DNA of 64,000 nucleotides from Asterias rubens (Eukaryota). The notes under the pieces are model-generated. The model was not told where the DNA came from, ran no database searches, and was given only the letters and a program-made list of their open reading frames with translations. Shown here piece after piece: positions 3,351 to 58,400 of this stretch (its first letter is position 1; the number at the start of each line of letters is the position of its first letter). The stretch covers positions 3,348,001-3,412,000 of the forward strand of contig NC_047074.1 in assembly GCF_902459465.1 (NCBI RefSeq), given 5' to 3'. The translations under genes were made by a program, and so were the position numbers.

Positions 3351-6300
3351 TCATGTGGCATACCAGCCTTGTGACCTTCGGACAGCCTTCATCCACTCCT
3401 TGCAGATCGGTTCATAAGATTCTAGAGCAGGTCGAGGGTCAAAGATCGTCTGGCTGACACGCAGCGAGACTAGCTCCTCTTTGCTCTTCCAAACGCCTGA
3501 CATTGGAAATTATGGTAAATGGAATTCACGTTAATAACAATAATAATCGTAAGTTCTTTTTTAAAAATTTCACAGTAACATCTCAATGCGCTTTACATAA
3601 GTGTCCTGGGGTGGATTTCACAAAGAGTCTTACATATCTCGAGTTAGGCTGAATTATTCGTCCTAACTTAAGACTAGCTTTAAGTTTTTTAATTATCTCC
3701 TAGGACTAATCCTTAGTTAGGACCAGTCCTAAGTTCTTAAGTCCCATTAGGTCTGAAATCAACCCCTGGTCATTAGGCCATAAACATTCCTGTCTCAGCT
3801 CGAGCCCTGTGGAGTGTAAAGCTAAGCCCCATGCAAAGACGTGACCAATTTAAAAAGGAATCGCATCAAAATACTTTTGCATACTAGGTGTCCCATAAGC
3901 GCCATAAAAGTGCTAACAAAAAATATATGTGACTTTTTGGAGTCAATCAGCGTTGCTTTTTCAATACAATGCTACCATGGGTTGGTGACGAGTGTTATCT
4001 ATACGGCACACTGCCCATGGTAGCGAGGCTAGGTCAATGGTCATGGATGAGGCCAAAGTTCATGGATGAGGCCAAAGGTCATGGATGAGGCCAAAGATCA
4101 GGGATGAGGAAAGTTTGGCAGGGGGTTACGAGAGAAACTTAGTCTCACCTGCTCCAAGCCCAGCCAGAAAGGCTACCCCAAGACAAGACATATCCAGGTT
4201 TTGCGGTCGGTCAATCTTCTGGACGAGTAAACTGGACACCAACTGGAGGATGAAGTCATTATTGCTAACCCCTCCATCGAATCTGAGTAACGATATTGGT
4301 ATTTACATTATTCATTATGCTAAAGATGCATTTAGGAACTTCCGAGTTTGGTCGCGAACATTTGTTAAGATGTACATCCTTTCCACAGAGTGGGTGTGTT
4401 AACATTTTAAGTGGGTCTTTAAACTTAATGGATGAGCAGTTAAAGGCAGTGAACACTATTGGTAGTTACTCAAACTAATTATTAGCATAAAACCTTACTT
4501 GGTACAGAGTTATGGGGAGAGATTGATAGTATAAAACATTGTGAGAAATGGCTCCCTCTGAAGTGACGTAGTTTTTGAGAAAGAAGTAATTTTCCACGAA
4601 TTTGTCTTCGAGACCTCAGATTTAGAATTCAAGGTCATGAAATCAAGCATCTGAAAGCACACAACTTCGTGTGACCAGGGTGTTTTTTCTTTCATTATTA
4701 TCTCACAACTTCAGACAACCAATTGAGCTCAAGTTTTCACAGGTTTTTTGTTTTATGCATATATGTGGAGATACGCCAAGAGAGAAGACTGGTCTTTTAC
4801 AATTACCAATAGTGTCCAGTGTCTTAATCTGCCTGGGGCAGTCAGCAGCCCTACAGGTTTGGGCATGATTCAATTATATCCACTGTTTGGAAATGGAAAT
4901 ACACGCAGACAACATGTGTTAGTGGCAAGACAAAAAATGTGTTTTATTCTGCTCTTTTTAACCCTTTGGTGCACAAATAAATTAAACAAACAAAAAGTGT
5001 GTTTTTCTCAACATTTTTTGATAGCACCCTCTGTTGAACATCACACCAAAGGAAAGCTTAGCAATCACTCTACAAAACCAGATGAGTGCAGTATATATGG
5101 GGACTGTAGTTTTTAAGTTATGACTTTTTATAAAAGTCCAATTTGACGAGTTTTTTGTTGTCGCTAGCAACCGCCTTGTACACCATAGGGTTAATGGAGT
5201 TTTCCCAAAATGGTATTGAGGATTGTACTGGTATGAACTGTTCAATCAGTAGGCTTTTGGATCAAAGCTTAAAATAATAGTAATAATAATAATAACCCGT
5301 TTTTCACACCCGAAGGGCATCCAAAAGTGTTCACATTATTAACCCTGGTCACTTGGCCTTAATTCACTCCTTAAACCATCTCAGCTCCCTGGTGGGGAGT
5401 ATACAGCCTTGTGCAACATTAAATATGCGCTACTCGGCTAAATCAATCATAAGAACCACCTCTACCCTCGCAGGTACCCGTTTATACCCCTGGGTGGAGA
5501 GAAGCAATTATAGCAAAGTATCTTGCTCAAGGACACAAGTGTCATGACCGGGATTCGAACCCACACTCTGCTGAACTGAAGTTATCCATCCTTCCTTTTT
5601 AGCATAAAATCAAGTTATAATGAAGCTATAAATAGTGAAATTCAAAAAATGTTTTACCTGATTATAGGTCTGAGTTTGGTTCCACTTTGAGTCTTGGCAA
5701 TATTGTAGAGTTGAACGACCCTGTTAAAGGTGTGGAAGACAATGAAGTGTGTATTTCAAAATGTGTAGGTAGATGACAGCAGGTTTTAGAAATGTAGGCC
5801 TAATTAAACCAACCTAAGCAATACTTATGATGAGAAAAAACAAATTATCAAAAAGTATCTTTTAAGTATTGGGTTGATTAAGGAAATCAAATTAAGATCA
5901 AATGCGCAAGATGTTTAAAAAGCTTTATAAAAATACAATACATTAGACCTAACTTTTCCGACCCCATCAAAATCCAACATCAGGTTTTGTTTGATTCAGT
6001 TGGAATATGGACAGCACTAAAACGATAATTAAGTAAATCAAACTAAGATCAAATACACAAAATGCTATGCTTTAAAAATACAATACATTAGACCTAACTA
6101 TTCCGAATTATCAAAATCCAACATCAGGTTTTGTTTGATTCAGTTGGAATATGGACAGCACTAAAATTACAATTATGTAAATCAAATTAAGGTCAAATGC
6201 ACAACATGTTGAAAATGCTTTTTTTTTCAAATACAATACATTAGACCTAACTATTCCGACCCGTCACAATCCAACATCAGGTTTTGTTTGATTCAGCACT

Positions 6301-9300: not shown

Positions 9301-12300
9301 TTAACCATAGCACTCGAAGCAGTCAATATTTGTATACTAGACGAATACAAAGGTGTTCCGTGCTTTTCTTTGATTAAGCACTAATGTAATAACAATAATA
9401 ATAATAGACCGTATTGAATATTACGTCACGGGGCTCAAATATCTGACCTACAAGATGGCGTCTGTGCGTGGTGTGCGTGTGTGTGTGCGTGCATGTGCCG
9501 TAGAAATCAAACCGGGAAGGTTGCGTGCTGCTTGCTTCGATGATGTACGCGTTTGGACGCGCATACGGTTTGCCCTACAAGATGGCGACTTTTCATAGCA
9601 AAAAGGGGTAATTCAATACAGTCTATAATGGGTTATTATATAGCATTTTATCACACCAGACGGTGTATCAAAGCGCTCAGTACTGGTTTCCTACAAGGTA
9701 TGTGGAGCTACATTTGTGAAGTATCCGACATGTTTCTTTACAGCACCATGCAATGGGTTTACTGGCGCAATATATGCTGTTGATAAAAAAAGAACACCAG
9801 CAAACCCCTTCTCCTTTTGATAAGTGAACTGGGTTCTTTTTCATGCATTACCCGTCCGAAGGTTGGAAGGATGCATCAAAAATGGTTAAGTGTCTTTCTT
9901 CAGTGCCAAAACCAGAACTCAAACCCAACACTCTGCTGATCGGAAACTCAGAGCTTGAGTTCGGTGTCCTTAGTTGCCCGACCCGCTACGCTAGAAGGCC
10001 ATACATCACAAGGCCAGACGGCCACATCAAGGCGAGGGCTACACTTTGGGCTAACACATCAAATCAACTGCCACCAGGGGCATGTTGCCACCTACCTCTG
10101 GAATTACAAACATGGTTACCCCCTAAACATTCCATAAGGATAAAGGCATGGGAATCAAACACTAGGAGCCTGGTTCGTATTGACCCCTTGCACACACGCC
10201 AAATGCGGCGGCTGTGCCACGTTCACCATTTCTGGAGGTCATTAGGTTTACGTGTAAACGCTGCGTGTCACCTAAAATGCGCACTTTACTGAATAACGCA
10301 CGTTGACATTGACCACCAAAATGGCGCATCCAATGGCGAATATGGTCAATAGCAGAATGCAGTACTGCTTCTCTTAACCCAGACTTGGATAATTCTTACC
10401 CATTTTTAAACTCCACTCAATAACAGTCCCTGCATCTGAATCATTACACTCCAGCAGATAAACTGTCTCCTTGCCCAACTTCCAACCCACGATGGGATAA
10501 ACTCCTTGAAAAACAGAAGAAACAAAATATTAAGTAGGATTTGAAACTTTGCATGGTGGGAGTGTAGTAAGGTGAGGTTTGTGGTAGCACGATGTGTAAA
10601 TCTCTTTTGAGTAGTGTTTGTGAAGAACCTGTGGATGACAACTCAACAATTCGATCAGTATGCTCTCATCTTCTTCAAAAAAAAAGCTGAGTTGTCAACT
10701 AGTGGTTCTTTTTAGAACCAACACTACTGGAAAGAGATATACACATGGTGCTACCGCAAACCTCACCTATATAAAATAACAGAAAAACGGATTTGTTGAT
10801 GGAAAGACCGAGCAATTATGGTTCAGTGTCTTGCTTAAGGGCCAAGTGCCACAACCAGGACTCGAACCTAGACTCTGACAATAGCAGAACGTGTGTTTGG
10901 TGCACAGGACCGCTTAGCCACAAGGTTTGGGTTATCCGAAGGAAAAAACGTTTGAGCTGAAAACAACTTCAAAAGATTCCTCACATATTAAAAATGATTC
11001 ACTAACTTGAGGAAGTATGCTTTCCTACCATTACATGGAAGACATGGTCTACTGCCAGTGTTGAGTATGAGGAAAGTTCCCGTTCCCATGGTGACCTTGA
11101 TATCACCTTCTTGGAAGCAACACTGTCCGAAGGAAGCACTCGACTGATCACCGACCTAACATAATGAAAAACAACAACATAACAATATATTAATAAATAG
11201 TTGCAGTACTGTAGTACACCCACGGTTAACACATAGAATTTGAACTGCCTCTAGCCACTGGGCTGGGCTAGCTTGGTGGCCCAGACACTGCTCTAGTACG
11301 GTGTAGTAAAGAAAAGGTTGTAGGTTCAAATCATAGAGTTATATACACAAACTAGAGGGAGCACTGGCCTATATACGCGACCCGGCATGCGCGCGTACCT
11401 TCCCTTTAACTCTTTCAATCTTCAGGGGCAAGATTCAAAAGTTGACAAAAAGAACTGAAACTAGTATCCAAACTTAAGTAGGTATATTAAAAAGACAGTA
11501 TTTCAACCTTTTAGTAACCAGATGAATTTAACAATTAAATGAGCATTTGGCAATGACACTTTGTATCCCCAAGGTTTAGGGAAGTAGATCAAAGAGCATG
11601 GTTTATTTATATCTGAAATCATTTTTAGACGATACAACCATTTCCCACTGACACACAGTTAATTTCTTTTGACATCTTACCACAGCTTTAATAGGAATTG
11701 GTGCACCAAAGACTTCCGGATCACACAGCCCATAGTCATCACTGTCAATAACAACAAATGAAACAACAACACGAAAATGTTATTTTGCATAGCCTTTAAA
11801 GGCACTGGACACTCTTGGCAATTACTCAAAAGAATTGTTAACATCAAAACAAACTTGGTAACAATAAGACTGACATGTACTTACCTAGTGTCTTTAACCT
11901 CTGGCATGATATTGAGGGGAATCCCCAAGTATCCAGTGTGAATGGTGTTCCAGTCATTCTAGATTTAAAAAAAAAAACGTTTAAAGGCACTGGACACTAC
12001 TGCTAATTACTCAAAATAATTGTAAGCATACAAACTTACTTGGTAACAAGCAATAGAGAGCTGTTGATAGTATAAAACGTTGTGGGAAACAGCTCCCTCT
12101 AAAGTAAGGTTATTTTCGAGAAAGAAGTAATTTTCCACTAAAACTGAATTTGATTTTGAGACCTCAGAATTAGGTTTTGAGGTCACGAAATCAAGCATCT
12201 GAAAGCACACAACTTCGTGTGACAAGGGTGTTTTTTATTATCGCGCAACTTCAACGACCAATTGAGTTCAAATTTATACAGGTTTGTTATTTTGTGCAGA

Positions 12301-15300
12301 TCTTGGCGTTAGTAGCAAATATTTGGTAGTAGAAAATACCCTTCGCTGATATATTTGAAACATCAGTGGCATGTACTTTTGACAATTACCAAAGGTGACC
12401 AGTGTCTTTTAAGGGAAGATATCTTATTTTGTTAAGTGAAGGAGCCGTAAGGATTGGTTCCTGTATAGGCCCAAATAACAGTTGTTCATCACAGGACCAG
12501 GGGTCGATTTCACAAAGAACTTAGAACTAGTCCTAACTCGGGACTAGTCCTAGGACGAGTATCTCACCTAACTCAAGATAAGACTAGTCTTAACTCCACC
12601 CCAGGCATACAAGCAAGTCCCAAGGACCAGGGGTCGATTTCACAAAGAACTTAGAGCTAGTCCTAACTCGGGACTAGTCCTAGGACGAGTATCTCGCCTA
12701 ACTCAAGATAAGACTAGTCTTAACTCCACCCCAGGCATACAAGCAAGTCCCAAGGACCAGGGGTCGATTTCACAAAGAACTTAGAGCTAGTCCTAACTCG
12801 GGACTAGTCCTAGGACGAGTATCTCGCCTAACTCAAGATAAGACTAGTCTTAACTCCACCCCAGGCATACAAGCAAGTCCCAACAGTTTGGTGTGGAGTG
12901 AAAAAACATGCAAGACAAAACCTCACCTTATACATGTCGTATAAACCCGTTGCTGATATATTTGAAACGTCAGTGGCGTGTACTTTTCCTATGGAATGAA
13001 ATCCATGTAACACAATAAAACAGTGATATGAGTTTTGCCAGAATTGTCTCTTGATTTTTTGTTTAAGAGGCAGAAAGAGAAAGAAAATAAATAAAAACGT
13101 TTTATTTTATTTTACTCACCTTTTGTGAGTTTCCACACCAGCCACGTCTCAATAGTTCCGAACACGAGTTTATTATTCAGAGCGTCTTTCTTAACCTACA
13201 ACCGAGAATTGCAAAAGATTAGTTTGCATTAAAATATAAAAAGAAAGTATACGTTTGGTGATTACTCTTTAAACTAATGGCAATAAAAGCTTACTTGGTA
13301 ACAAGTACATCAACTTTCGAAAAACCAAAGGTGCATGTATAGGGGGCCTTGTTTGCCTATAAAGACACTGGACACCTTCAGTAATTGTCAAAGACCAGTC
13401 TTCTCACTTTGTGTATCTCAACATACTGTACGCACAAAATAACAAACCTGTGAAAATTTGATCGCCAAAGTTGAGAGATGATAATAAATTAAAACACCCT
13501 TGTCACAAGAAGTTGTCTGCTTTCAAAAGCTTGATTTCGCGACCTCAAAATCTAATTATGAGGTCTCAAAATCAAATTCGTGGAAAATTACTTCTTTCTC
13601 GAAAACTACGTTACTTCAGAGGGAGCCATTTCTCACAATGTTTTTAATCACATATACCCCAGAGCTACTGTCTCATGAGACTGTCGTACTAGAGTGAAAT
13701 TAGCTTTTCAATTAATGACCATTCGGACAATGTGAGGCGAACTAACCTGCGATTATCTTGAACCTCATTTTGAGGTGATAAAATGTACACTTGATTGAGG
13801 ATGCAGGAGTGAACAACAAGGAAGAGCTTGTTAGTTGTACGAAGGATAGATATGTGTGGTGTGTCAGACATCGAGCCCGACTCAAACATGCGGCAAGGCG
13901 ACAATTCAGGTCAACTGAGTGAGTCTCACTCAGAAGCAGCAAAACGTACACAAAGAAATTACCCCCAAAGAAATGGTCGAAATGGTAGATGTGAATCTTA
14001 CCAATAGATCAAATAACATTGAGAGGGGACCAGTTGCTCTATGACTTGCTGCGTCTTTGGACAGATGTTTTTGTGACAAAATTCTGTCCATGTTTGTTAA
14101 TACAAAATTGCTTTTTAAACCTATGATTACTTGAATGTAGTTTACCTCTGGCATGTTCTCCAGCACAAACGATAGTCGAATGGATACCTTTACAAGAAGA
14201 GGTTAGAAAAAAAACGTCTGATGATGGAAAATATTTATAGCGAAAAAGAAATAAAGAAGACAACAAAAATTGACACAGCAACAACAATTTTTTTTTACCC
14301 TCATGTATAATGCATAATGAGCACTTCTTGCGTATATAGCCTAGATTAGATTAGATGAGATTAGAATTATTTATTCAGCCAAATTTAAAAACACCAACAA
14401 AAGATACAAATATATAAATAAAAACACATATGTAGGCTACAACAATAGCAGAAGACAAACTAATTCCCATTTTGACTCACGTGTTGAGATGTGAATGTGA
14501 AGACGCCACCGGCTTCGAATCGCCGCATTCTGGAGAAGAAGTGCAAAAACTTGGATCCTTTTTGTAAACCCTTCATGAAATGAAAACAAAAAATAAAAAA
14601 ACACATTTACAAGAAACAAGTAGTGAGAAGTCAAACTTGATCATATTGTTTATTAACCTGCCCGATATGTGGCAGATTTTGCCCCCCCCCCCATCCACTA
14701 AAGAAAAGTTCCCATACTTGCATAAAAACACACTCTTTTTGTCTGCAACATATTGCCCCATCCCCCCCCCCCCCCACATGCCCTCTAAAGAATTCCTGAA
14801 AATTCCATAACACTGTGAGGACACAATGGGGTGGGGGTTGGGGGGGGGTGGGTTTGGAAGAAACCATGCCACATTTCGAGCACTTTCTGCCCAAACAATA
14901 GACTGTGCAAATTTCACGCGTAGGATCCGCCAAAATTCCTGAGTTTGTTTCCTTGACGCTACAAAGTGATCCCAAAATGTTTGTTAACGCTCGAGACTTA
15001 CGGTCCAATAGTGCATAAAATACAACCAGTAAACAAACCAACCTTGAAGCTTAAAGAGCGATTGATGTCTTCTACATACTTCTCTGCCCTTGTATCATTC
15101 CAACAAATGAAGTTGTGGTACGGTTCACCCGTCTCTCTGCAAAAAACAAACAAACAAACAAACAATTCATAAATACCCCAGACAGTTTCTCTACTCCTAT
15201 TGGTGGAGAGCGCATCAGGTGGGGGTGTTTAAATGGTTGATAATGACCAGCTGGAGCCGTTTATAACAGGCTGGCTTCGGCGTGTTTGGCGTGCAAGATT

Positions 15301-17151
15301 ATCATGCGGAACGCAATTCATAGCTATTAGTAACGGCGCATAATCTATTTCTAAGCGCGCACGCGTACACACAAGCCACATGCATCAAACAGATTCTTCA
15401 CAATGTTTTTGAAAAAAATATTTCAAACCTCAAATTTTCAATTGTCAAAGTGTCTATACTTTTTTTAACAAAAGGGAATTTATGAATGGAAATAAAAGAG
15501 TAGGGACTTGTTCTTAATCGTCCGCTTAAAACCTTGCAGCGTCGTTGCCGTGTGATCACACGGCAATGACCCTGCCGATTTTAAATGGACGTTTAAGAAC
15601 TCCTCGCTACCCTTTTATTCCCTTAATTTATAACTCTTGATGTTTATGGTCATTCAAAAATGTTGAGGTGTCCATGAGCGTACCTATTCCATGTTAGAAA
15701 TGTAGCTCGCAATGTTGATATTCCCATAGCAATGATTTGGGCTGCTACTAAACCAGCATCTGTTGGAAGAAGGGGTGGGAGTGGACATTAGAGGGTGGAG
15801 GTAAAGAGCAGAACAGATCAAAAATGACAACCCTTCCGACAAATAAAACAATTCATGCGCTGAATTTCAAGAATCTTTGGAGACATTAGCTCTCACCATG
15901 CAATGCCTGAAACACCATATAAATTTCAGTCTTTTGGATAGAACATCAAGCAGTGATCGTTATTATTATTGTTATTATTACTATTATTATTATTATTAAT
16001 TCGACCAATACAATCACACCAAGTTACAATAGCACGAGACAGAACATTAACGAAAACAAAATATATATAAATAAGCAAGAACTAAGGAAAATAAATACAC
16101 AATTATATGAAAAATTAAATAAATTAAATTAAGTTAATTAAATAAAATTAAATAAATAAGTTATTTGAACAAGAAAACAAAAACAGGAAGCAAACAAAAC
16201 CAAATGGGAACGAATGTGTTACTAGGATTGGTAAAAAACTGTCCTGTTTATTAGTTCCATGTTTATCCAGTGCCCTTAAACCCCCCTCTGCCACGCCACA
16301 CTACATTAACCTGTAATTGCTTCTTTAACAACTGATGTAAACTGCTTCCACAGACTGTCAGGTTCAATCTCAACTCTGCCATGAGCAGGACTCGAACCCA
16401 CACTCTGTCGATCAGAAACACCGGAGCTTGAGTCCAGTGCCCTTAACCACTCGGCCATGACACACCTTACATGTATTTACCTGTAATTGCTTCTTTAACA
16501 ACTGATGTAAATTGCTTCCACAGACTGTCGGGTTCAATCTCAACTCTGCCATGAGCAGGACGGTGAACCTGCATCTAAGTCAATATCAAATACAATTGAT
16601 TAATAACTTTGATGAGGACGGTACAAAACAACTAACGTATGACAAGAATGTAACCAGTTTTAATATGGGTACAACCATGTACACCTTGCCCAATATTGAG
16701 GCAGCCAGGGCTCGAACTTAATACAGGACTGCAAGACCAAGACCAGTGCTTGTAGTGTTGGGCAAGCAAATTCCCTTTTTCAACAAAATGTCTCAGTGCA
16801 ACTAAAAATTTGTCCCGACTAGTGTGAATGTCACGACTATTTGAGGCAGGACAAGTCGAATAGTAAATTTCAGTAACCACACCCTGATACATTGTACATG
16901 TAAGTCAGCAACCAGAACGGATGTCTGATGCCCTGAACCGCTCAGCAACGACACGCCACGTGGCAATTTGGTATAATGACAGTCATCCAGGTGGTTATAT
17001 GAATACAACGGCAATAAAATGACTCAAATGAGACAGAACATACCTTTTGAGTTCCACTTCCTTTAAGTTCAGCCTTGTCATTGTAAATGTGACATCGTAT
17101 TGTTGTGGTGCCGATGTCGATAGCCGCGATGAATACTTCTTTGGTTGCCAT
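3351..17151 (-). CDS. GK5: Glycerol kinase 5 (FGGY family), 17 coding exons, 516 aa. Exons: 17151-17044, 16574-16481, 15759-15684, 15136-15043, 14570-14481, 14187-14146, 13195-13120, 12988-12927, 11958-11885, 11741-11681, 11155-11029, 10504-10400, 8754-8660, 7802-7699, 5720-5658, 4282-4149, 3496-3351
   Basis: All exons have GT-AG boundaries with consistent phases and sum to 1551 nt. Peptides [82 protein letters not shown] and [10 protein letters not shown] align colinearly with human GK5 as recalled. Confidence 0.95.
4040..4110. repeat. 19-20-bp tandem repeat TCATGGATGAGGCCAAAG x3-4
   Basis: Direct reading. Confidence 0.9.
4440..4827 (+). mobile_element. T2/Kolobok-type MITE, family A
   Basis: TTAA-AGGCAGTGAACACTATTGGTA...TACCAATAGTGTCCAGTGTC-TTAA, with internal sequence shared by many copies in the window. 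Confidence 0.85.
5281..5580 (-). mobile_element. tRNA-derived SINE. Further copies or fragments at ~9790-9970, 10810-10920, 16392-16465, 19935-20220, 43955-44160, 52110-52450, 57660-58000.
   Basis: Shared GAGAAGCAATTATAG..AAG..TCTTGCTCAAGGACACAAGTGTC..GACCGGGATTCGAACCCACAC, the reverse complement of a B-box head plus conserved central domain, with (TAA)n-like tails. Confidence 0.85.
5885..6310. repeat. ~150-bp tandem triplication in GK5 intron 14
   Basis: AAATACAATACATTAGACCTAAC at 5931, 6076 and 6229. Confidence 0.9.
7305..7697. repeat. Degenerate tandem duplications beginning at the GK5 exon 14 donor
   Basis: GGACCAG...ATCAA.GG recurs at ~7310, 7382, 7520 and 7675. Confidence 0.75.
8336..8578. 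mobile_element. PIF/Harbinger-type MITE with long TIRs and CAG target duplication. Related copies at ~38180-38365, 41283-41560, 43870-43960, 44330-44575, 53268-53320.
   Basis: CAG-GGCCCAATTTCATAGAGCTG...GCTCTATGAAATTGGGCC-CAG. Confidence 0.85.
8797..9337 (+). mobile_element. Non-autonomous element ending in a ~170-bp hairpin with apex CCCGAGGCGAAGCCGAGGG
   Basis: Second copy at ~58048-58500 in reverse orientation shares both the unique arm and the hairpin. Confidence 0.8.
10568..10770. mobile_element. MITE with ~50-bp TIRs in a TA context
   Basis: AGGTGAGGTTTGTGGTAGCACGATGTGT...ACACATGGTGCTACCGCAAACCTCACCT. Confidence 0.75.
11981..12412 (+). mobile_element. T2/Kolobok-type MITE, family A, containing a captured piece of GK5 exon 8
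   Basis: TTAAAGGCACTGGACAC...CCAGTGTCTTTTAA; 12345-12380 matches 12952-12987 at 34/36. Confidence 0.85.
12494..12883. repeat. Three tandem 130-bp copies of a Harbinger-type MITE plus flank (single relatives at ~3606-3780 and ~56090-56260)
   Basis: Units start at 12494, 12624 and 12754. Copy 1 differs from copies 2 and 3 at two positions. Confidence 0.95.
13359..13645 (-). mobile_element. T2-type MITE family A, truncated
   Basis: One terminus (AAAGACACTGGACAC) plus the shared internal body. Confidence 0.75.
16311..16404 (-). other. Duplicated GK5 exon 2 (candidate exon 2') with a SINE-derived 5' end and acceptor
   Basis: Its 3' ~80 nt copy 16481-16561 with two synonymous differences. The upstream SINE supplies cag|AGT GTG GGT TCG AGT CCT. 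Donor is GTTAAT. Length is 94 nt, identical to exon 2. The duplication is certain; splicing is unproven. Confidence 0.6.
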
Positions 17152-17501
17152 GGCTAAGTGGCAATGTTGATTACCTCTTGCCAAGATTCAGATTTTTGTT
17201 TTTAGTTCGTTTCATCACCTGAAGGAAAGTGAAGAGATGTGGTTACAAAGGGTTTTTTCTTTTAAAGGAACAAATTTACAGAATTGGCAAGAAGAAAAAA
17301 AATTGTGAAGATCAGAGATTTACAGGTTGTACTAAAACCCCCTCGTCCCCCCTTGACCCACGACCCTTCGACGTCTGCCCTGTATTTGAAGCGTGTCCCA
17401 ATTGCGAATTCAGAAATGACCTAGTAAGAATTAAGTTCCCGATATATGAGTTTAACTTTAACTATGAAAAGATGAATGCCGCATTGATGATTGGATAACT
17501 G

Positions 17502-17890
17502 GAAAAGTTTCCGTATGGCGCCACCACTTTTTTAATTCGATATAGTATCTAATTTACCTCAATGAGATATCCCTTTTTGTAAAAATTTGTGAAAAAGTGG
17601 TGGCGCCATACGGAAAGTTATCCGGATAACTTTCTGTGGCACCACCACTTGTTCACTCATTTTTACAACAAAAGAGGATCTTATTGAGGTAGACCCAGTG
17701 ACTGGGGCGATAGATTCCTTTTTTCGAAATTTTGACATTATCGGTCAGCTAGATGACCAATAATGTAAAAATTTTGAAAGGAATCTAGCGCCCCAGTCAC
17801 CTGGTCACTGGGTCAATCATTAGGGTAAATTGGATACTATATTATTTTATATCGAAAGAAAAAATGGTGGCGCCATGCAGAAACTTTTCC
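17502..17890. mobile_element. Two adjacent, oppositely oriented copies of a ~130-bp MITE, the second interrupted by a nested inverted-repeat element (~17694-17815)
   Basis: Repeated TATGGCGCCACCACTTTTT / AAAAAGTGGTGGCGCCATA; nested CCCAGTGACTGGGGCG...CGCCCCAGTCAC. Confidence 0.7.
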
Positions 17891-18377
17891 TCATGATTAA
17901 ATCAACAATAAACATAATTTAGGCCACTAACAAAGGCTAAAACTGAAAGATATATACCGAGTGTAATTAACAATAACAATTAACATTTGAATTCATGCTG
18001 GTTATACATCAACATCACCATGCAGGAAAACAAGTTTTAAAAATAAAACATGTTTAAAAACACACTCCATGTACATCATGTACATTCCCAGGTGACAGAC
18101 TAGGACTTGGGTTGGTTGGAGCGAACACTAGTCCACCTTGTTAAACATGAGTCTCTTTTCTTAAGTTTTATCATCAGTCTTGTCGCCATCCAATTCCAAC
18201 AATGCAATGTAATGTTGAGCCAAAATACTAAATCAGTCCAACATCACGTGGCAGTTTGATGATGATGTTCGGCAATGGGACTACATGTATACATACATGT
18301 ACATGTACGTAGAGATGGGCTATGGTCATGGCATGGATGGAACACTATCTCAGCGACACAGCGTATTTATAACTCAC

Positions 18378-52400: not shown

Positions 52401-55400
52401 GACCCAACCACTAGGACTTGAGTCTGGTAGACCCCTCTGCCATGACATGCTACACTAGCAATTTATGGTGAAGTTTCCTACTCAATATGTACATACCTGT
52501 TCTCTTGACTCGTTACTGTATCGTTGCCGCATGTCATCAAAGTACTTGTAATGATCTTTCAAAACCCAGACACGCAGCATTCTGTCCTGACCGGCTGTGG
52601 CCTGCAAAGTAACAAAGTTGAAATATTGTATTAAACATGCCGTACACTGCCATCACCATGAAGTGTACTCGAGCCGAACAAATATTCAATCTGCCAAAAG
52701 TCCACCAGTCTAACCATTGGAATTAGCCAACAATACTTATTCTAGTCAATGTGACTTCAGCAGTTAGCTTGGTAGTATTCGATTTCAAGTCCTACAGTCT
52801 AAAAAATGGGAACTAGACGACAATACTTATTGTAGTCATTGTGAAATCAGCAGTTAGCTTGGCAGGATTCGAACCAACAACCTTGTTATTGCAAGTTCTC
52901 CAGTGTAACCACTGGAACACTTACCAGTAGTCGTCCACATGGTGAGAACTTCATGGTCCAGACAGCTCCAGCATGTTCTCGCCCTAGGTCCTGAGCTAGC
53001 CTCAACTGATCAAAGTCATATGGGCCTTTGTTACTGTTGGCTGCCTTGATCTGTTAAAAAAAAAAATTGAAACGTTTTTTGTTTAAATAACTAGCTTGTA
53101 GGAGAATTTAGGCCTGTAATTTTTTGTTTTTCTTGTAGTGCTTTTCAGTTTGCTGTAAGCGCTTTGAGGAATGCCAATTCATATTGCGCTATATAAATAC
53201 TGTTTTATATTATTATTATTAGCTGGCAAAGAGTTTATTATTATTATTATTAGCTGGCAAAGAGGACAGGGCCCAAGTTCATGGCTCTGCCTACCGTAAG
53301 CAAAGAATCGGCACTTATGAAAAAAGGAAACTCAGCGCTTGCTTCAGGGTTTCGTACCTTCATTGTTCTTGAATCTGGCAGAGATTCTTCATCGCTCGAC
53401 TCTTGCTCCTCGTGTCTGAACGCCTCGTCCGCTGCATTCTTGATCTTAGACAAGATCTTCTTGAACTTTAATCTAATGGCAGAATCGGATCAAAATCATT
53501 ACTTTTCCTCCAGTCATACAATGTAGCGTATTGGGCACCTTCTCAAAAACTATTCCAGGATAAGTTGCGGGAAAAGTGTACACTCAAAGTGTAAATTACT
53601 GAAGATACATGTAAGTTTAAGGACTGATTTGGTTCAGGTTTAGACACTTTCCCTGTAGATAGCTAACTTCTGCAAGTGTGTTAACAGCCTACAGAGCAGT
53701 ATGTGTTTTTGGCCAACTGCGTGATCAGATCTCAAAGCTCTAAACCTGGCAAATGTTTGCATGTAATTTTAACAAAAGGCGTTAATTTTATCACCTCCGG
53801 CATTTCTTGAGACAAATCTTGTGAGTCTGAAAAGACCTTGACAAACATTTTTGTGGGAACTAAAGGAGACAATTGTGCATTAGCAAGAGTGTATTTCATC
53901 AAGTCGAATTGAAAGCTACGTAAATGAATTTGCGTTGTTGCATGACCTCATATGTCTGCTCACAAGAACTGTCAGCCTGTGGTCCAGTGTTAATGATTTT
54001 AAAGCCAGTGGACACTATTGGTTAATGTCAAAGACCAGTCTTCTCACTTGCTGTATCTCAACATATAACAAAACTGTGAAAACTTGTGCTTGATTGGTTG
54101 TCGGAGTTGCGAGATAACTATGAAAGAAAAGAACACCCTTGTCACACGAAGTTGTGTGCTTTCAGATGCTTGATTTCGAGACCTCAAAGTCTAATCTTGA
54201 GATCTCGAATTTGTGGAAAATTACTTCTTTCTCGAAAACTACTCCACTTCAGAGGGAGCTGTTTCTCACAATGTTTTATACTACCAACCTCTCTCATTAC
54301 TCGTTACCAAGTAAGGTTTTATGCTAATAATTATTTTCAGTAATTACATGTACCAATAGTGTCCAATGCCTTTAATCCTGACACTGTCCAAACATCTGCT
54401 CACAGTCTTTGGGAAAATGGGCCCAGGATACAAAATCTACCTACTTTTTAGATTTAGACTTTTTGGCTCCGGCAGCAGTCGACTTTGTTTTCTCTCCGTC
54501 ACTTGCTCCTTCTTTGTCAAGGCTGGAATTACTGCAAAGGAAAGACAAAAAAAAAACATAAACTCGAAAACATCAGAAAGAGAAAACAGAAAAAGGGAGA
54601 AATTTACACAAATATATATTTTTTTTCAATTTAAATAAAGGCTTAAAATATCTTATTTTAAACCCCTTTTGTCTGAGTTTTATTCTCTCAAATCTCTTGT
54701 GTTTCTACTTTCACAACTTTTGAACCAACGGCGGTACCAACATGGGATTTAAACAGGATTCAAGCTCTTTTCAAATGTATCAATTTTTATTTTTTTTTAA
54801 CTCGTCCGACAAACGACTCATTTTGCTTGATTGCACCCCCATTCTGAAACAATTACATCTTCAAGCTGATGCTCATTGTCCACAAAGCACTAAAATGGCA
54901 AGGCTCCCCACTATATTTCTGAACTTCTTCAAGTTTACACTCCATTAAGAAATCTTCGATCAAGTTCCATGCTTCTTCTCATTGAACCCAAAACTCGACA
55001 CTCATGGGGTGACAGGTCTTTTTCTTCAGCTGCGTCACGCATCTGGAACTCTCGTGTCTTTGTACCACAACATTCAAATATCTTCTCAAAACGTATCTTA
55101 TGTCACAGGTTTTCAAGGATTAATTTTGTTGTGTCTGTTTTTCTTTGTTTTGTTTTGTTTGTTTTGTTTGTTTTGGGGTTTTTACTGCGCCTTGAACACC
55201 AAGCAGGGTGGATACGTGCGCATTACAAGTCTTATTATTATTATCATTATTTTTATCATTATGTAAAGGGGAACAGTCTTGAATTGACTGATAAACTCTA
55301 CCTTGGATATTCTGAGGTGATTCTCATGATGTGTAGAGCTAGTGGATTAATGCATTGTGGTAACTGTTCCTCGGCTAGAAGCAGCGGTATTGCCTCCCCC

Positions 55401-58400
55401 GTGTCTAAATTCCTAACAATAACTTGTGACAGTACTTCCTGCAGTTGGAGAAAAAAATCATGAATCCATTCTTAACCTGCCTAAAGAGATTGTAATTTTT
55501 TTTTTTATTTAATTTTTAATGAGATGTTGCCTAACATCACAAGTCCACGGACGGCCACCTTAAAGGCAGTGGACACTATTGGTAATTACTCAAAATAATT
55601 ATTAGCGTAAAACCTTTCTTGGTGATGAGTAATAGGGAGAGGTTGATGGTATAAAACATTGTGCGAAACGGCTCCCTCTGAAGCGCCTTAGTTTTTGAGA
55701 AAGAAGTAATATTCCACGAATTTGATATCGAGACCTCAGATTTAGATTTTGAGGCCTCGAAATCGAAATCAACCATCTAAACGCACACAACTCCGTGTGA
55801 CAAGGGTGTTTTTTGTTTTTTTCATTATAACTTGCAACTTCGATGACCGATTGAGCTCACATTTGTACAGGTTAGTTATTTTATGCATATATGTTGAGAT
55901 ACACCATCTGTGAAGGCTAGTCTTTGACATTTACCAATAGTGTCCAATGCCTTTAAGGTGAGGGCTACACTTAACCGATTTCACCCAAGTGAACTGTTAT
56001 CCGGGACACATTGCCATCTACTCCTGGGGCTGAAACAGGGTTAGCCCCTTCACAGTCCGTAAGGATCTAGGCATGTATATTCGACTGGTACAGGGGTCAA
56101 TTTCACAAAGAGTTAGGACTCGTCTTATCTCAAGGGACGAGTAACTCGTCTTAACTTAGGATTAATCATAAGGTCCGCATGCTACAGTGCAGGGTTTGGA
56201 CTCATCCCAAGTCCTAAGATTAGTCTTAAGTTAGGAAGAGTTTTGTGAAATCGACGGCTGGTCTTACAAATCAAAATATTGCTTAACCATTTTCTTCTAA
56301 GAAAAATGAGCAGGATACCAGTATAAACAGATGGTACATGTGGAATGGTATTTTGGCTGGTAACTTTTTTTCTGATCAGCATAAACTTGTTGTGCTCATC
56401 AGCTAATTAATTAGGCTTAAAGGCACTGGACACGTACTCTCACTTGGTGTATCCCAACAAATCTGTGAAAATTTGGGCTCATTTGGTCATCGAAGTTGCA
56501 CAAAAATAATGAAAGAAAAGCACCCTTGTTGCACAATGCAATCAGCAGCCTGAGAAGAGCTTTGGGTATTCCTTGGATTGAAACATTTGTGAGAAATGAC
56601 CTCTTTCTCAAAAACTACTTCAAAGGGAGTCGTTTCTCAGTTTTGTTATACTATCAGCAGCTCTCCGTTGCTCATTAATACGTTTTTTTTGCCAAATATG
56701 TATTTTAAGTAACTACCAGAACATGTCCAGTGCCTTAAAGCAACTCCCTTAATTAAACCCCCTGCTCTGGGGTGGGTCCACTAAGCTGACTACCTGTGTG
56801 CCTTTGATGGCCCCTTTTCAACCCCCTTTTTTTCCCCTTTTTTTTTCTTTTTCTTTTTTTATGTCAAACCCATTGTTACTCTGTCTGTAACTGTAATGTT
56901 AAACTGTAAATTTTGTAAATTCAAGTGTAAGTAATATCGCCAATGCCAACCAAATTGAAAGTTTTTAATAAACCATGATCAATAATTATAATTCTGACTT
57001 ACTTCATCTGTTAACATCTCTCCCTTAGTGGACTGCCCTTTCATCAGAGCATAATACTGAGCAAGCGTGTCCGTGTCTGGTGTATTTCCTTTACTCTTAC
57101 TACCCCCGTTACCGCTCTTGGCGTCACTGGAACCGCTTTGACCTCTTGGGGGCTTCGGAGGGGGCGGGTTCTTCAAAGCTTCCAGGACTTCCGCTCGAGA
57201 TTCACCTTTGATGCTTTGTGTTTCCTGCAGGATTGTCGAAGATATTTCTTGTGATTAGGGACTTGAACCGAAGACCTCAGGATTACGTTGCCAGCACTCT
57301 TCCAACTGAGCTATCAAGCCCTATACTGGCGGTCTCTCCATAAACTCTGTCAAAATAGCTCTTGCTAACCTGTCAATCCCGAGGTCAAAGGTCCAAATCC
57401 CGCTCAAAATTTAACAGTCAATTGCCCTTGTGGTTTATGATTAGATATTATGTTGTCAAATCTTAGCAGTCACAAAAGTAAAAGTTGCAAAAATGAATTA
57501 ATGGCCTGATGATTTGATCCTAGCAGAGTCTTTCTCGAAGGCTAAAGTAAATGGCAACACAACATACAGGAAAAGGTATCTTGAAGGTAACATAAGCAGT
57601 AAGTGGAACTACATGAATAGTCGCAGCAAAAAGCAAAGGGTATAATAATAGTAATAATATTTATTTTTTATATAGCGCTTTTTACACCATGTTTCAAAGC
57701 ACTTCCAACATTATTACCCTGATCACTGGGCCATTTCATTCCTTAAGCCATCTCAGCTCCCTTTGGAGTATACAGCCTGTGCCGCCAAATATGTAGCGCA
57801 CTAAGCTAACCAACCACATTGACAAGAACCATCTCTGCCCTCACAGGTACCCATTCATCCCTGGGTGGAGAGAAGCAATTATAGTAAAGTTTCTTGCTCA
57901 GGGACACAAGTGTCACAACCGGGATTCGAACCCACACTCTGCTGAACAGAAACACCAGAGCTTGAGTTGGGTGCTCTTATCCGATCGGGCACGACACCCA
58001 CAGATACTGGGTAGGCTATACAACAATAGGGAGAAAAGGAGGGAATAGTATACAAATATTGACTGCTTCGAGTGCTATGTTTAAAACTATGACTCCCAAT
58101 GCCCTAGGTGATCCCCGAAGCGTTATATTTTCCCGAGGCGCAGCCGATGGAAAATGGAACGGTCCAGAGATCACCGAGGGAGTCAGAGTTTTAATCATAG
58201 CACGAGTCAAAGCAGTCAATATTTGTTTTATAACACCCCAACAGACTACAATGTATTTATCATCCTTGACACGTAAAGTTCATACGCTCATTTCAGATAC
58301 ACATATACACAACTGATTGGGTTCGAGGTGGTTAAAAAATACGTCTAGGAACTGCCTGCCGTGTAATAGTTGTTGGACTATCACACAGCAAACAATGCAC

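What the first reader, a model, noticed from the sequence alone, without database searches (positions are those of the whole stretch)
16270..16576. SINE-assisted twin of GK5 exon 2 with the same length and phase (candidate mutually exclusive or poison exon)
Seen: in transcription order the locus reads exon 2 (94 nt), donor, tRNA-like SINE head (A box TGGCCGAGTGG, B box GGTTCGAGTCC), a copy of exon 2 from GTCCTGCT onward, donor GTTAAT, then a degraded second SINE head. The junction lies where the B box (GTTCGAGTCC) resembles exon 2 (GTTCACCGTCC). A SINE-internal CAG at 16405-16407 defines a 94-nt in-frame exon, [31 protein letters not shown] versus MQVHRPAHG.... The only two differences in the shared part are synonymous (CCC/CCT, CAA/CAG). 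The spacer intron is just 76 nt, and including both exons would shift the frame. Inference: microhomology-driven duplication plus SINE exonisation made a ready alternative exon. The A/B boxes could also drive a Pol III chimeric RNA. Caveats: the polypyrimidine tract is weak and two synonymous changes are weak evidence.
Basis: partly seen in the sequence, partly recalled or inferred. Interest (0 to 1): 0.75.

Follow-up and report, generated by a model that had tools for sequence, protein, structure and literature searches.

The report
Unused intronic twin of GK5 exon
A 170-base tandem duplication in the common starfish's glycerol-kinase-5 gene left a near-perfect second copy of most of one exon in the next intron, but the copy is broken in the sister species and no RNA or annotation uses it, so it is an ordinary decaying pseudo-exon, not a new alternative exon.

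Summary
In Asterias rubens GK5 (minus strand), 87 nt of coding exon 2 plus its donor recur 170 nt downstream with 3 differences, two of them in the exon. A tRNA-like SINE head lies between the copies. The duplication is not an assembly artefact. It is also in the A. amurensis genome, in independent A. amurensis DNA contigs and in two ENA assemblies.

The proposed function is not supported.
- In A. amurensis the copy has a +1 insertion that creates an in-frame TGA, a +9 insertion and three substitutions.
- Two other samples carry amino-acid changes in the copy (E>K, D>E).
- Canonical exon 2 is protein-identical between the two species.
- Both "synonymous differences" are derived changes in the canonical A. 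rubens exon, not evidence of constraint on the copy.
- A. rubens RNA contigs and all RefSeq isoforms of both species use only the canonical exon.
- Five apparent junction reads to the copy's donor are A. amurensis canonical reads. That species' exon 2 is identical to the A. rubens copy.

The proposed origin is supported and refined. In A. amurensis the second copy is followed by a full SINE. This shows a tandem duplication across a TCCTG microhomology just after the B box, followed by a ~125-nt deletion in A. rubens. The scan found a similar case elsewhere in this genome (s1-150180).

The parts
17044..17151 (-). GK5 coding exon 1 (starts at the ATG; donor AAG|gtatgt)
   Evidence: Exact spliced reconstruction of P0272. 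An A. rubens RNA contig joins 17044 to 16574.
16481..16574 (-). Canonical coding exon 2, 94 nt, [31 protein letters not shown], donor CAG|gtaaat
   Evidence: RNA contig X2 record 8 covers it with 0 mismatches and joins it to exons 1 and 3. The protein is identical in A. amurensis.
16475..16561 (-). Repeat copy 1 (exon 2 from GTCC onward, plus donor hexamer)
   Evidence: the repeat finder family D1.
16556..16560 (-). TCCTG in exon 2: one partner of the crossover microhomology
   Evidence: Comparison of exon 2, the S1|copy junction and the A. amurensis SINE 2.
16392..16474 (-). SINE 1: 5' leader plus tRNA-like head with A and B boxes, cut off right after the B box
   Evidence: Word depth on 16388-16440 is about 19,000 against about 5 for the flanks in A. 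amurensis DNA, so this is a high-copy family.
16386..16390 (-). TCCTG at the SINE-head|copy junction (the novel joint of the duplication)
   Evidence: Reads from other SINE copies stop matching the window at 16388 (loose ends).
16305..16391 (-). Repeat copy 2 (pseudo-exon body plus donor CAG|gttaat)
   Evidence: No change since the rubens/amurensis ancestor in A. rubens; broken in A. amurensis.
16311..16404 (-). No evidence of use.
   Evidence: Reading frame. Depth 0 at 16190-16351 in the A. rubens RNA contigs. Absent from RefSeq isoforms.
16265..16304 (-). SINE 2 head remnant. The rest of this SINE (anticodon arm, B box, body; about 125 nt) is deleted in A. rubens and present in A. amurensis.
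   Evidence: Alignments.
16236..16241 (-). T6 run, the first possible Pol III terminator downstream of SINE 1
   Evidence: Sequence. No RNA depth between the copy and this run.
15684..15759 (-). GK5 coding exon 3
   Evidence: The junction 15759-16481 is seen in an A. rubens contig and in A. amurensis reads.

Best explanation
This is a neutral, unused pseudo-exon left by a small tandem duplication.

Proposed history:
1. In the common ancestor of Asterias rubens and A. amurensis, a tRNA-derived SINE sat about 6 nt downstream of the donor of GK5 coding exon 2.
2. An exchange or template switch occurred between TCCTG in exon 2 and TCCTG just after the SINE's B box. The surrounding sequence is also partly similar. 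The event duplicated a 170-nt unit head to tail: the exon 2 tail, the donor and the SINE head.
3. The product is exon 2, SINE head, exon copy, full SINE. A. amurensis still shows this arrangement.
4. A. rubens later lost about 125 nt of the second SINE, which left the 'degraded second head'.

The copy lies in intron 2 and is spliced out with it. It drifts. By chance it is still intact in the A. rubens reference. It is frameshifted with a stop in A. amurensis, and it carries amino-acid changes in other samples.

Shown: the structure in two species, the junction microhomology, decay of the copy, and canonical splicing. Inferred: the order of events and the type of exchange (unequal crossover or replication template switch).
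For: Structure:
- An 87-nt repeat, 97% identical, 170 nt apart.
- The same arrangement in the A. amurensis genome (L003) and in independent A. amurensis DNA contigs. One of these bridges copy, SINE head and exon 2 tail (X13 record 4).
- Two ENA assemblies carry an ORF that runs from the SINE's ATG through the copy.

Mechanism:
- In A. amurensis the second copy is followed by a SINE with B box GGGTTAGAA, then TCCTGATTGTGGCAC. Exon 2 has ...CCGTCCTGCTCATGGCAG.
- The hybrid joint reads GGGTTCGAG-TCCTG-CTCATGGCAG.
- Other copies of the family in the window continue after the B box in the same way.

Decay of the copy:
- The A. amurensis copy has +T (giving ...VEVEP*), +9 nt and 3 substitutions. The would-be exon is 104 nt. 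The +T and two of the substitutions were also seen in contigs from another individual.
- P0001 has E>K and P0165 has D>E in the copy.
- Canonical exon 2 shows 0 protein changes and 2 synonymous changes between the species.

No sign of use:
- The A. rubens RNA contig runs exon 1, exon 2, exon 3 at 100% identity, and no contig covers 16190-16351.
- A. rubens RNA runs that hold the exon words do not hold the words of 16240-16480.
- RefSeq isoforms X1 and X2 of A. rubens and both A. amurensis transcripts contain MQVHR, never SVGSS.
- The copy's donor has T at +3 and A at +5. Of the gene's 16 donors, 15 have a purine at +3, and the one exception has G at +5.
Against: - In A. rubens the copy is fully intact: 94 nt, in frame, with an acceptor CAG and a pyrimidine tract no poorer than that of exon 2 itself (py20 = 11 for both).
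- The RNA evidence for A. rubens is thin. It rests on one small run laid as contigs, which drop rare isoforms, plus index look-ups. Raw reads came only from A. amurensis, at a depth of about 3-9.
- In the inferred ancestor the exon parts of the two copies differed at 1 of 87 positions, while the SINE parts differed by about 8-10 substitutions plus 3-4 indels in about 66 nt. Past purifying selection on the copy is one possible cause. Gene conversion from the exon and CpG decay of the SINE heads are the others. This was not resolved.
Confidence: 0.82

Rival explanations
1. A nascent, A. rubens-specific alternative (mutually exclusive) coding exon. The copy would be spliced in place of exon 2 in some tissue or condition, giving GK5 with SVGSS in place of MQVHR. 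The 76-nt spacer and the frameshift on double inclusion would enforce exclusivity.
For: The copy has the same length and phase as exon 2, an open frame, and an AG/GT pair. Its acceptor tract is comparable to that of exon 2. It shows no change in the A. rubens lineage since the ancestor. The exon part is much less diverged than the SINE part.
Against: No RNA contig or RefSeq isoform uses it. The donor is weakened (GTTAAT). It is broken in A. amurensis and carries nonsynonymous variants elsewhere. Zero changes in 87 nt is not unusual under neutrality (about 2.6 expected, P about 0.07). Both exon differences arose in the canonical exon.
Confidence: 0.07
2. A poison exon. Occasional inclusion of the copy together with exon 2 shifts the frame to a stop (…[15 protein letters not shown]), sends the mRNA to NMD and tunes GK5 dosage. 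A poison exon needs no open frame, so the A. amurensis lesions would not matter.
For: Double inclusion gives a premature stop. The structure, the acceptor CAG and the donor GTTAAT are kept in both species.
Against: No reads or contigs show inclusion. The first-pass threshold was 3 reads, against about 10 canonical junction reads in all. The 76-nt intron it requires is far shorter than any intron of this gene (the smallest is 131 nt). The copy evolves at least as fast as the surrounding intron in A. amurensis, whereas regulated poison exons are usually conserved.
Confidence: 0.06
3. The SINE head drives a Pol III chimeric RNA: tRNA-like head plus exon copy, about 225 nt, ending at the T6 run at 16241-16236.
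For: The A and B boxes match the consensus. The head plus 14 exon-derived nt score 28.2 bits on the Rfam tRNA model, with a complete acceptor stem. A T6 run follows.
Against: Depth is 0 over 16244-16297 in three RNA runs. The tRNA score is below the gathering threshold, and its register differs from the family's own acceptor stem (GTGTCA/TGACAC). Most SINE copies are silent (general knowledge).
Confidence: 0.03
4. An assembly artefact: collapsed or mis-joined haplotypes.
For: None beyond the general possibility in repeat-rich introns.
Against: The same structure is present in a second species' chromosome assembly, in Logan contigs from another individual and in two ENA assemblies.
Confidence: 0.01

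Closest known systems
Tandem exon duplication giving mutually exclusive exons (reviewed in PMC9013439, PMC9741552, PMC5740500)
   Same: Adjacent homologous exon-like units with the same length and phase. A short spacer and frame incompatibility could enforce exclusivity.
   Different: Only part of the exon was duplicated, and the 5' end and the acceptor are supplied by a SINE. There is no RNA evidence of use. The frame is lost in the sister species. Known functional pairs are mostly ancient and conserved.
SINE (Alu-type) exonisation
   Same: A SINE-internal AG would serve as the acceptor, and 13 nt of SINE would become coding.
   Different: No transcript uses the site. The SINE here is in sense orientation and contributes its B-box region, rather than antisense poly-U and cryptic sites as in the classic Alu cases (general knowledge).
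Microhomology-mediated tandem duplication (unequal exchange or replication template switching)
   Same: Head-to-tail copies, a 5-nt identity (TCCTG) at the novel joint, and the second copy continuing into the parental downstream sequence in A. amurensis.
   Different: One partner of the microhomology is a coding exon and the other a SINE, so the unit carries a splice donor.
Exon-half plus SINE-head intronic minisatellite in the same genome (scan finding s1-150180), and SINE-head arrays (s1-150239; SINE-derived satellites in squamates, PMC10702118)
   Same: Exon tail, donor and SINE front copied head to tail inside an intron. Shared with the sister species. No sign of use.
   Different: Here there are only two units rather than 7 or 32. 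I could not inspect the other loci, so it is unknown whether their breakpoints also lie at the B box.

Membership tests
Mutually exclusive tandem-duplicated exon pair | Two adjacent homologous exons of equal length and phase | tested here: met
   94 nt against 94 nt, same phase, 79 of the 81 duplicated exon bases identical in A. rubens. Not met in A. amurensis, where the unit is 104 nt.
Mutually exclusive tandem-duplicated exon pair | Each exon is found in mature mRNA, one at a time | tested here: not met
   Only the canonical exon appears in the A. rubens RNA contig, in A. amurensis reads and in RefSeq isoforms. The apparent joint 15759-16311 is a cross-species mis-assignment. Depth was low.
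Mutually exclusive tandem-duplicated exon pair | Reading frame and protein sequence of both exons conserved between species | tested here: not met
   The A. amurensis copy has a +1 frameshift with TGA and a +9 insertion. E>K and D>E occur in other samples.
Poison (NMD) cassette exon | Inclusion introduces a premature stop | tested here: met
   Double inclusion gives a stop 15 codons into the copy.
Poison (NMD) cassette exon | Detectable inclusion, rising when NMD is blocked | not testable with these tools
   No inclusion was seen at the available depth. No data with NMD inhibited exist here.
SINE exonisation | A SINE-derived splice site is used in a transcript | tested here: not met
   No joint at 16404 in any run. 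No annotated isoform uses it.
Microhomology-mediated tandem duplication | Head-to-tail copies with short identity at the novel joint, and the parental sequence continuing after copy 2 | tested here: met
   Spacing 170 nt. TCCTG is shared by exon 2, the joint and SINE 2. A full SINE follows copy 2 in A. amurensis.
tRNA-derived SINE (Pol III type 2 promoter) | A and B boxes at tRNA-like spacing, with a tRNA-like fold | tested here: inconclusive
   The boxes match the consensus. ARAGORN calls tRNA-Leu. The Rfam tRNA score is 28.2 bits, just under the gathering score of 29, and the fold borrows exon-derived bases.
tRNA-derived SINE (Pol III type 2 promoter) | Dispersed, high-copy family with a shared body | tested here: met
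   Other copies occur in the window. Word depth is about 19,000 against about 5. The copy at 16392-16474 lacks the body because it is the duplicated front part.

The most novel reading that the evidence does not exclude
SINE heads in Asterias may be recurrent breakpoints for small tandem duplications. Forks could stall, or templates switch, at the TFIIIC/Pol III-bound B box. When a SINE sits just downstream of an exon, such an event copies the exon tail together with its donor. That would make SINE heads a systematic source of ready-made exon twins.

This locus, the 7-unit RING-CH case (s1-150180), the 32-unit head array (s1-150239) and a 90-nt duplication that ends inside a B box at 52698-52872 would all be products of one process. 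A. rubens GK5 would be a very young, still-intact instance that could be recruited as an alternative exon.
Probability: 0.15. Interest if true: 0.55.

Novelty: new member of a known kind. Interest (0 to 1): 0.25.

Why it matters
As a functional element it does not matter: the copy is an unused, decaying pseudo-exon. It has modest value in three other ways.
- It is a clean, datable example of how a partial exon duplicate with its own donor, and with an acceptor donated by a SINE, can arise in one step. The ancestral arrangement is still visible in the sister species.
- It is a caution for analysis. "Only synonymous differences" between an exon and its copy can come entirely from constraint on the real exon. 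Cross-species RNA reads can also be assigned to the copy when the other species' exon matches it better.
- A second, similar locus in the same genome hints that SINE heads may favour such duplications. A genome-wide scan could test this.

Tried and rejected
1. The read laying joint 15759-16311 (5 reads in X27, GT..AG) first looked like use of the copy's donor. I rejected this. The exon 2 tail of the A. amurensis reference is identical to the A. rubens copy at both distinguishing sites. The single read that reaches 16360-16372 lacks the A. amurensis copy's own changes.
2. An ORF-fragment search with the 50-aa ORF that runs from the SINE's ATG through the copy found only one cluster with two members. 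Their DNA could not be fetched.
3. Exact look-ups of two neighbouring ORFs found nothing on record.
4. A metagenome scan with the junction 20-mer gave two unrelated chance hits: a SINE-like sequence of another organism and a bacterial contig.
5. The first profile search (A3) failed to reach Asterias because scattered fragments collapsed the HMM to 84 positions. Rebuilding a compact alignment (A7) found A. amurensis GK5.
6. I considered a long target-site duplication from SINE insertion and a retrotransposed 5'-transduction copy. I rejected both. SINE 1 lacks its 3' part rather than its 5' part, and there is only one SINE body downstream.
7. I considered that the second head belongs to another family (TTTAAAGGCACTGGACA elements at 11979 and 56415). 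Its 5' part matches SINE 1, not those elements.
8. The tRNA-like fold that uses exon-derived bases is treated as coincidence. Its score is below the gathering threshold and its register differs from the family's own acceptor stem.
Full report
**What is there.** The gene is on the minus strand. Read in that direction, the order is:
- coding exon 1, from the ATG at 17151 to 17044;
- coding exon 2, 16574..16481, 94 nt, donor CAG|gtaaat;
- a tRNA-like SINE head, 16474..16392;
- a copy of exon 2 from GTCC onward, 16391..16311, donor CAG|gttaat;
- a second, degraded SINE head, 16304..~16265;
- AT-rich intron;
- exon 3, 15759..15684.

The repeat finder reports the 87-nt repeat as 16305-16391 and 16475-16561, 97% identical, 170 nt apart. 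ARAGORN calls a tRNA-Leu at 16377-16455. Rfam's tRNA model scores 28.2 bits, just under its gathering score of 29, on 16461..16377. A CAG at 16407-16405 would delimit a 94-nt in-frame exon with SVGSS in place of MQVHR. Including both exons runs into a stop.

**Which gene and genome.** Pfam finds FGGY_C in a downstream exon. A profile search reached "glycerol kinase 5-like [Asterias amurensis]" (P0171). Its 90% cluster also holds A. rubens isoforms X1 (P0272, 516 aa) and X2 (P0273, 502 aa). The window's exons are identical to the A. rubens protein and differ from A. amurensis at D/E and I/V. P0272 is rebuilt exactly from 17 GT-AG exons between 17151 and 3351. The window is therefore A. rubens GK5. 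An earlier scan note (s1-150291) had already pointed to Asterias.

**The duplication is real and older than the species.** The A. amurensis locus (L003, CP134963.1) aligns to 16721..16265 at 94% and has the same arrangement:
- exon 2 at 3945-4038;
- SINE head at 4045-4127;
- the copy at 4128-4218.

Logan contigs of an independent A. amurensis DNA run include one that bridges copy, SINE head and exon 2 tail (X13 record 4). Two ENA assemblies hold a 50-aa ORF that starts at the SINE's ATG and runs through the copy (P0001, P0165). Assembly error is excluded.

**How it arose.** In A. amurensis the second copy is followed by a complete SINE. This SINE has a head, a B box (GGGTTAGAA), then TCCTGATTGTGGCAC... 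and a body. Exon 2 reads ...CACCGTCCTGCTCATGGCAG. The novel joint reads GGGTTCGAG-TCCTG-CTCATGGCAG.

The structure is therefore A-M-B-(M'/M)-B-M'-rest. This is what a tandem duplication by exchange or template switch between TCCTG in the exon and TCCTG after the B box would produce. Other copies of the family in the window continue after the B box with TCC(C/T)GGT(T/C)(G/A)TG(A/G)CAC, which also partly resembles the exon.

A. rubens later lost about 125 nt of SINE 2, from after CACTGGAT to shortly before GGAACTAATAAAC. The stretch between the donor and the tRNA-like part (ACATGTAAGGTGT) is shared with other family copies. It is the SINE's own leader, so the SINE sits only about 6 nt from the donor.

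**Is the copy under selection? No.** The four sequences were compared.
- A. amurensis exon 2 has cct and cag, exactly like the A. rubens copy. The two "synonymous differences" are therefore derived changes in the canonical A. rubens exon. There they had to be synonymous, and they say nothing about the copy.
- The third difference is donor position +3 (A in the exon, T in the copy), shared by both species.
- Since the species split, the A. rubens copy has not changed. About 2.6 changes are expected at about 3% per lineage, so this is not significant.
- The A. amurensis copy acquired gtt>gta, att>gtt, a +T that gives ...VEVEP-TGA, a 9-nt insertion and one more substitution. The would-be exon is 104 nt with in-frame stops. 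The +T and two of the substitutions were also seen in contigs of another individual. That individual also carries a form without the 9-nt insertion.
- The ENA ORFs carry E>K and D>E in the copy.
- Canonical exon 2 is protein-identical between the species.

In total the copy shows three or four nonsynonymous changes, one synonymous change and two indels. The exon shows no nonsynonymous and two synonymous changes. This is what neutral drift of the copy predicts.

**RNA evidence.**
- One A. rubens RNA contig (X2 record 8, 655 nt, 0 mismatches) joins exon 1, exon 2 and exon 3. No contig of that run touches 16190-16351.
- The A. rubens RNA runs that hold essentially all exon words are not holders of the words of 16240-16480.
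- Raw A. amurensis RNA reads gave 3 (X27) and 2 (X28) reads for the joint 15759-16481.
- X27 also gave 5 reads for 15759-16311, which at first looked like use of the copy's donor. A. amurensis exon 2 is identical to the A. rubens copy over the whole exon part, so its canonical reads fit the copy better than the exon. The only such read that reaches 16360-16372 lacks the A. amurensis copy's own changes. These reads are therefore canonical.
- No joint at 16404 was listed. Depth over 16244-16297 is 0 in all three RNA runs, so nothing supports a Pol III read-through transcript either.
- RefSeq models for both species contain MQVHR only. The only annotated alternative skips the 42-nt coding exon 6.

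Depth was low, at about 3-9, and the contigs hide rare isoforms. Rare or tissue-specific use in A. rubens is therefore not excluded.

**Splice-site quality.** The copy's acceptor tract has 11 of 20 pyrimidines, equal to exon 2's own and to the lowest value in the gene. Its donor GTTAAT has T at +3 and A at +5. Of the gene's 16 donors, 15 have a purine at +3, and the single exception has G at +5. The 76-nt intron required is much shorter than the shortest intron of the gene, 131 nt.

**An open point.** In the inferred ancestor the exon parts of the two units differed at 1 of 87 positions. The SINE parts differed by about 8-10 substitutions and 3-4 indels in about 66 nt. A first rough Fisher test on the A. 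rubens copies alone gave p = 0.0002. Three or four of the substitutions are at CpG sites. Possible causes are:
- gene conversion of the copy by the exon shortly before speciation;
- faster decay or ectopic conversion of the CpG-rich SINE heads;
- past selection on the copy.

The data do not decide between these. The later decay of the copy argues against present selection.

**Context.** The scan has a very similar locus elsewhere in this genome: half of a RING-CH exon, its donor and a SINE front, copied 7 times, shared with the sister species and unused (s1-150180). It also has a 32-unit array of SINE heads (s1-150239). I could not inspect either locus. SINE-derived tandem arrays are described in squamates (PMC10702118). 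Tandem exon duplication as a source of mutually exclusive exons is reviewed in PMC9013439 and PMC9741552.

**Verdict.** The duplication mechanism is supported and refined. The alternative exon, poison exon and Pol III readings are not supported. This is a new instance of a known kind of event, and interest is low to moderate.

Noticed in passing
window 12493-12883: A tandem repeat of 130 nt, 3.0 copies, 99% identical, inside a GK5 intron (between coding exons 8 and 9). It is very young.
   Followed up: no
window 52698-52872: A tandem duplication of 90 nt, 2 copies (82%). One end lies inside a SINE B box (B-box hit at 52865-52878, minus strand). This is another small duplication with a breakpoint at a B box.
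   Followed up: no
window 17490-17900: A cluster of nested inverted repeats with GGCGCCACCAC cores just upstream of GK5, MITE-like. The weak Rfam plant-miRNA hits here are hairpin artefacts.
   Followed up: no
window 16377-16461: The SINE head plus 14 exon-derived bases fold as a complete tRNA (Rfam 28.2 bits). The acceptor 3' strand, TCATGGC, comes from the exon copy, and the same heptamer occurs at the head's 5' end. Probably coincidence, helped by the palindromic CATG.
   Followed up: partly
window 16240-16480 (run X1): A marine metatranscriptomic RNA-seq run holds half of the sampled words of this stretch, which is more than the putative exon alone could give. It could be pre-mRNA, DNA carry-over or a local transcript.
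   Followed up: no
window 14146-14187: A 42-nt coding exon 6 ([14 protein letters not shown]) is skipped in A. rubens RefSeq isoform X2. This is the only annotated alternative splicing of the gene.
   Followed up: partly
L001 4130-4160: An unrelated metagenome contig (JYMV01052145.1) carries a SINE-like sequence with exactly GTTCGAGTCCTGCTCATGGC. A tRNA-like 3' half can therefore naturally resemble the exon 2 segment.
   Followed up: no
window 11979-11996 and 56415-56432: Two copies of a different dispersed element that begins (G/C)TTTAAAGGCACTGGACAC. It resembles the anticodon-arm region of the SINE heads studied here.
   Followed up: partly
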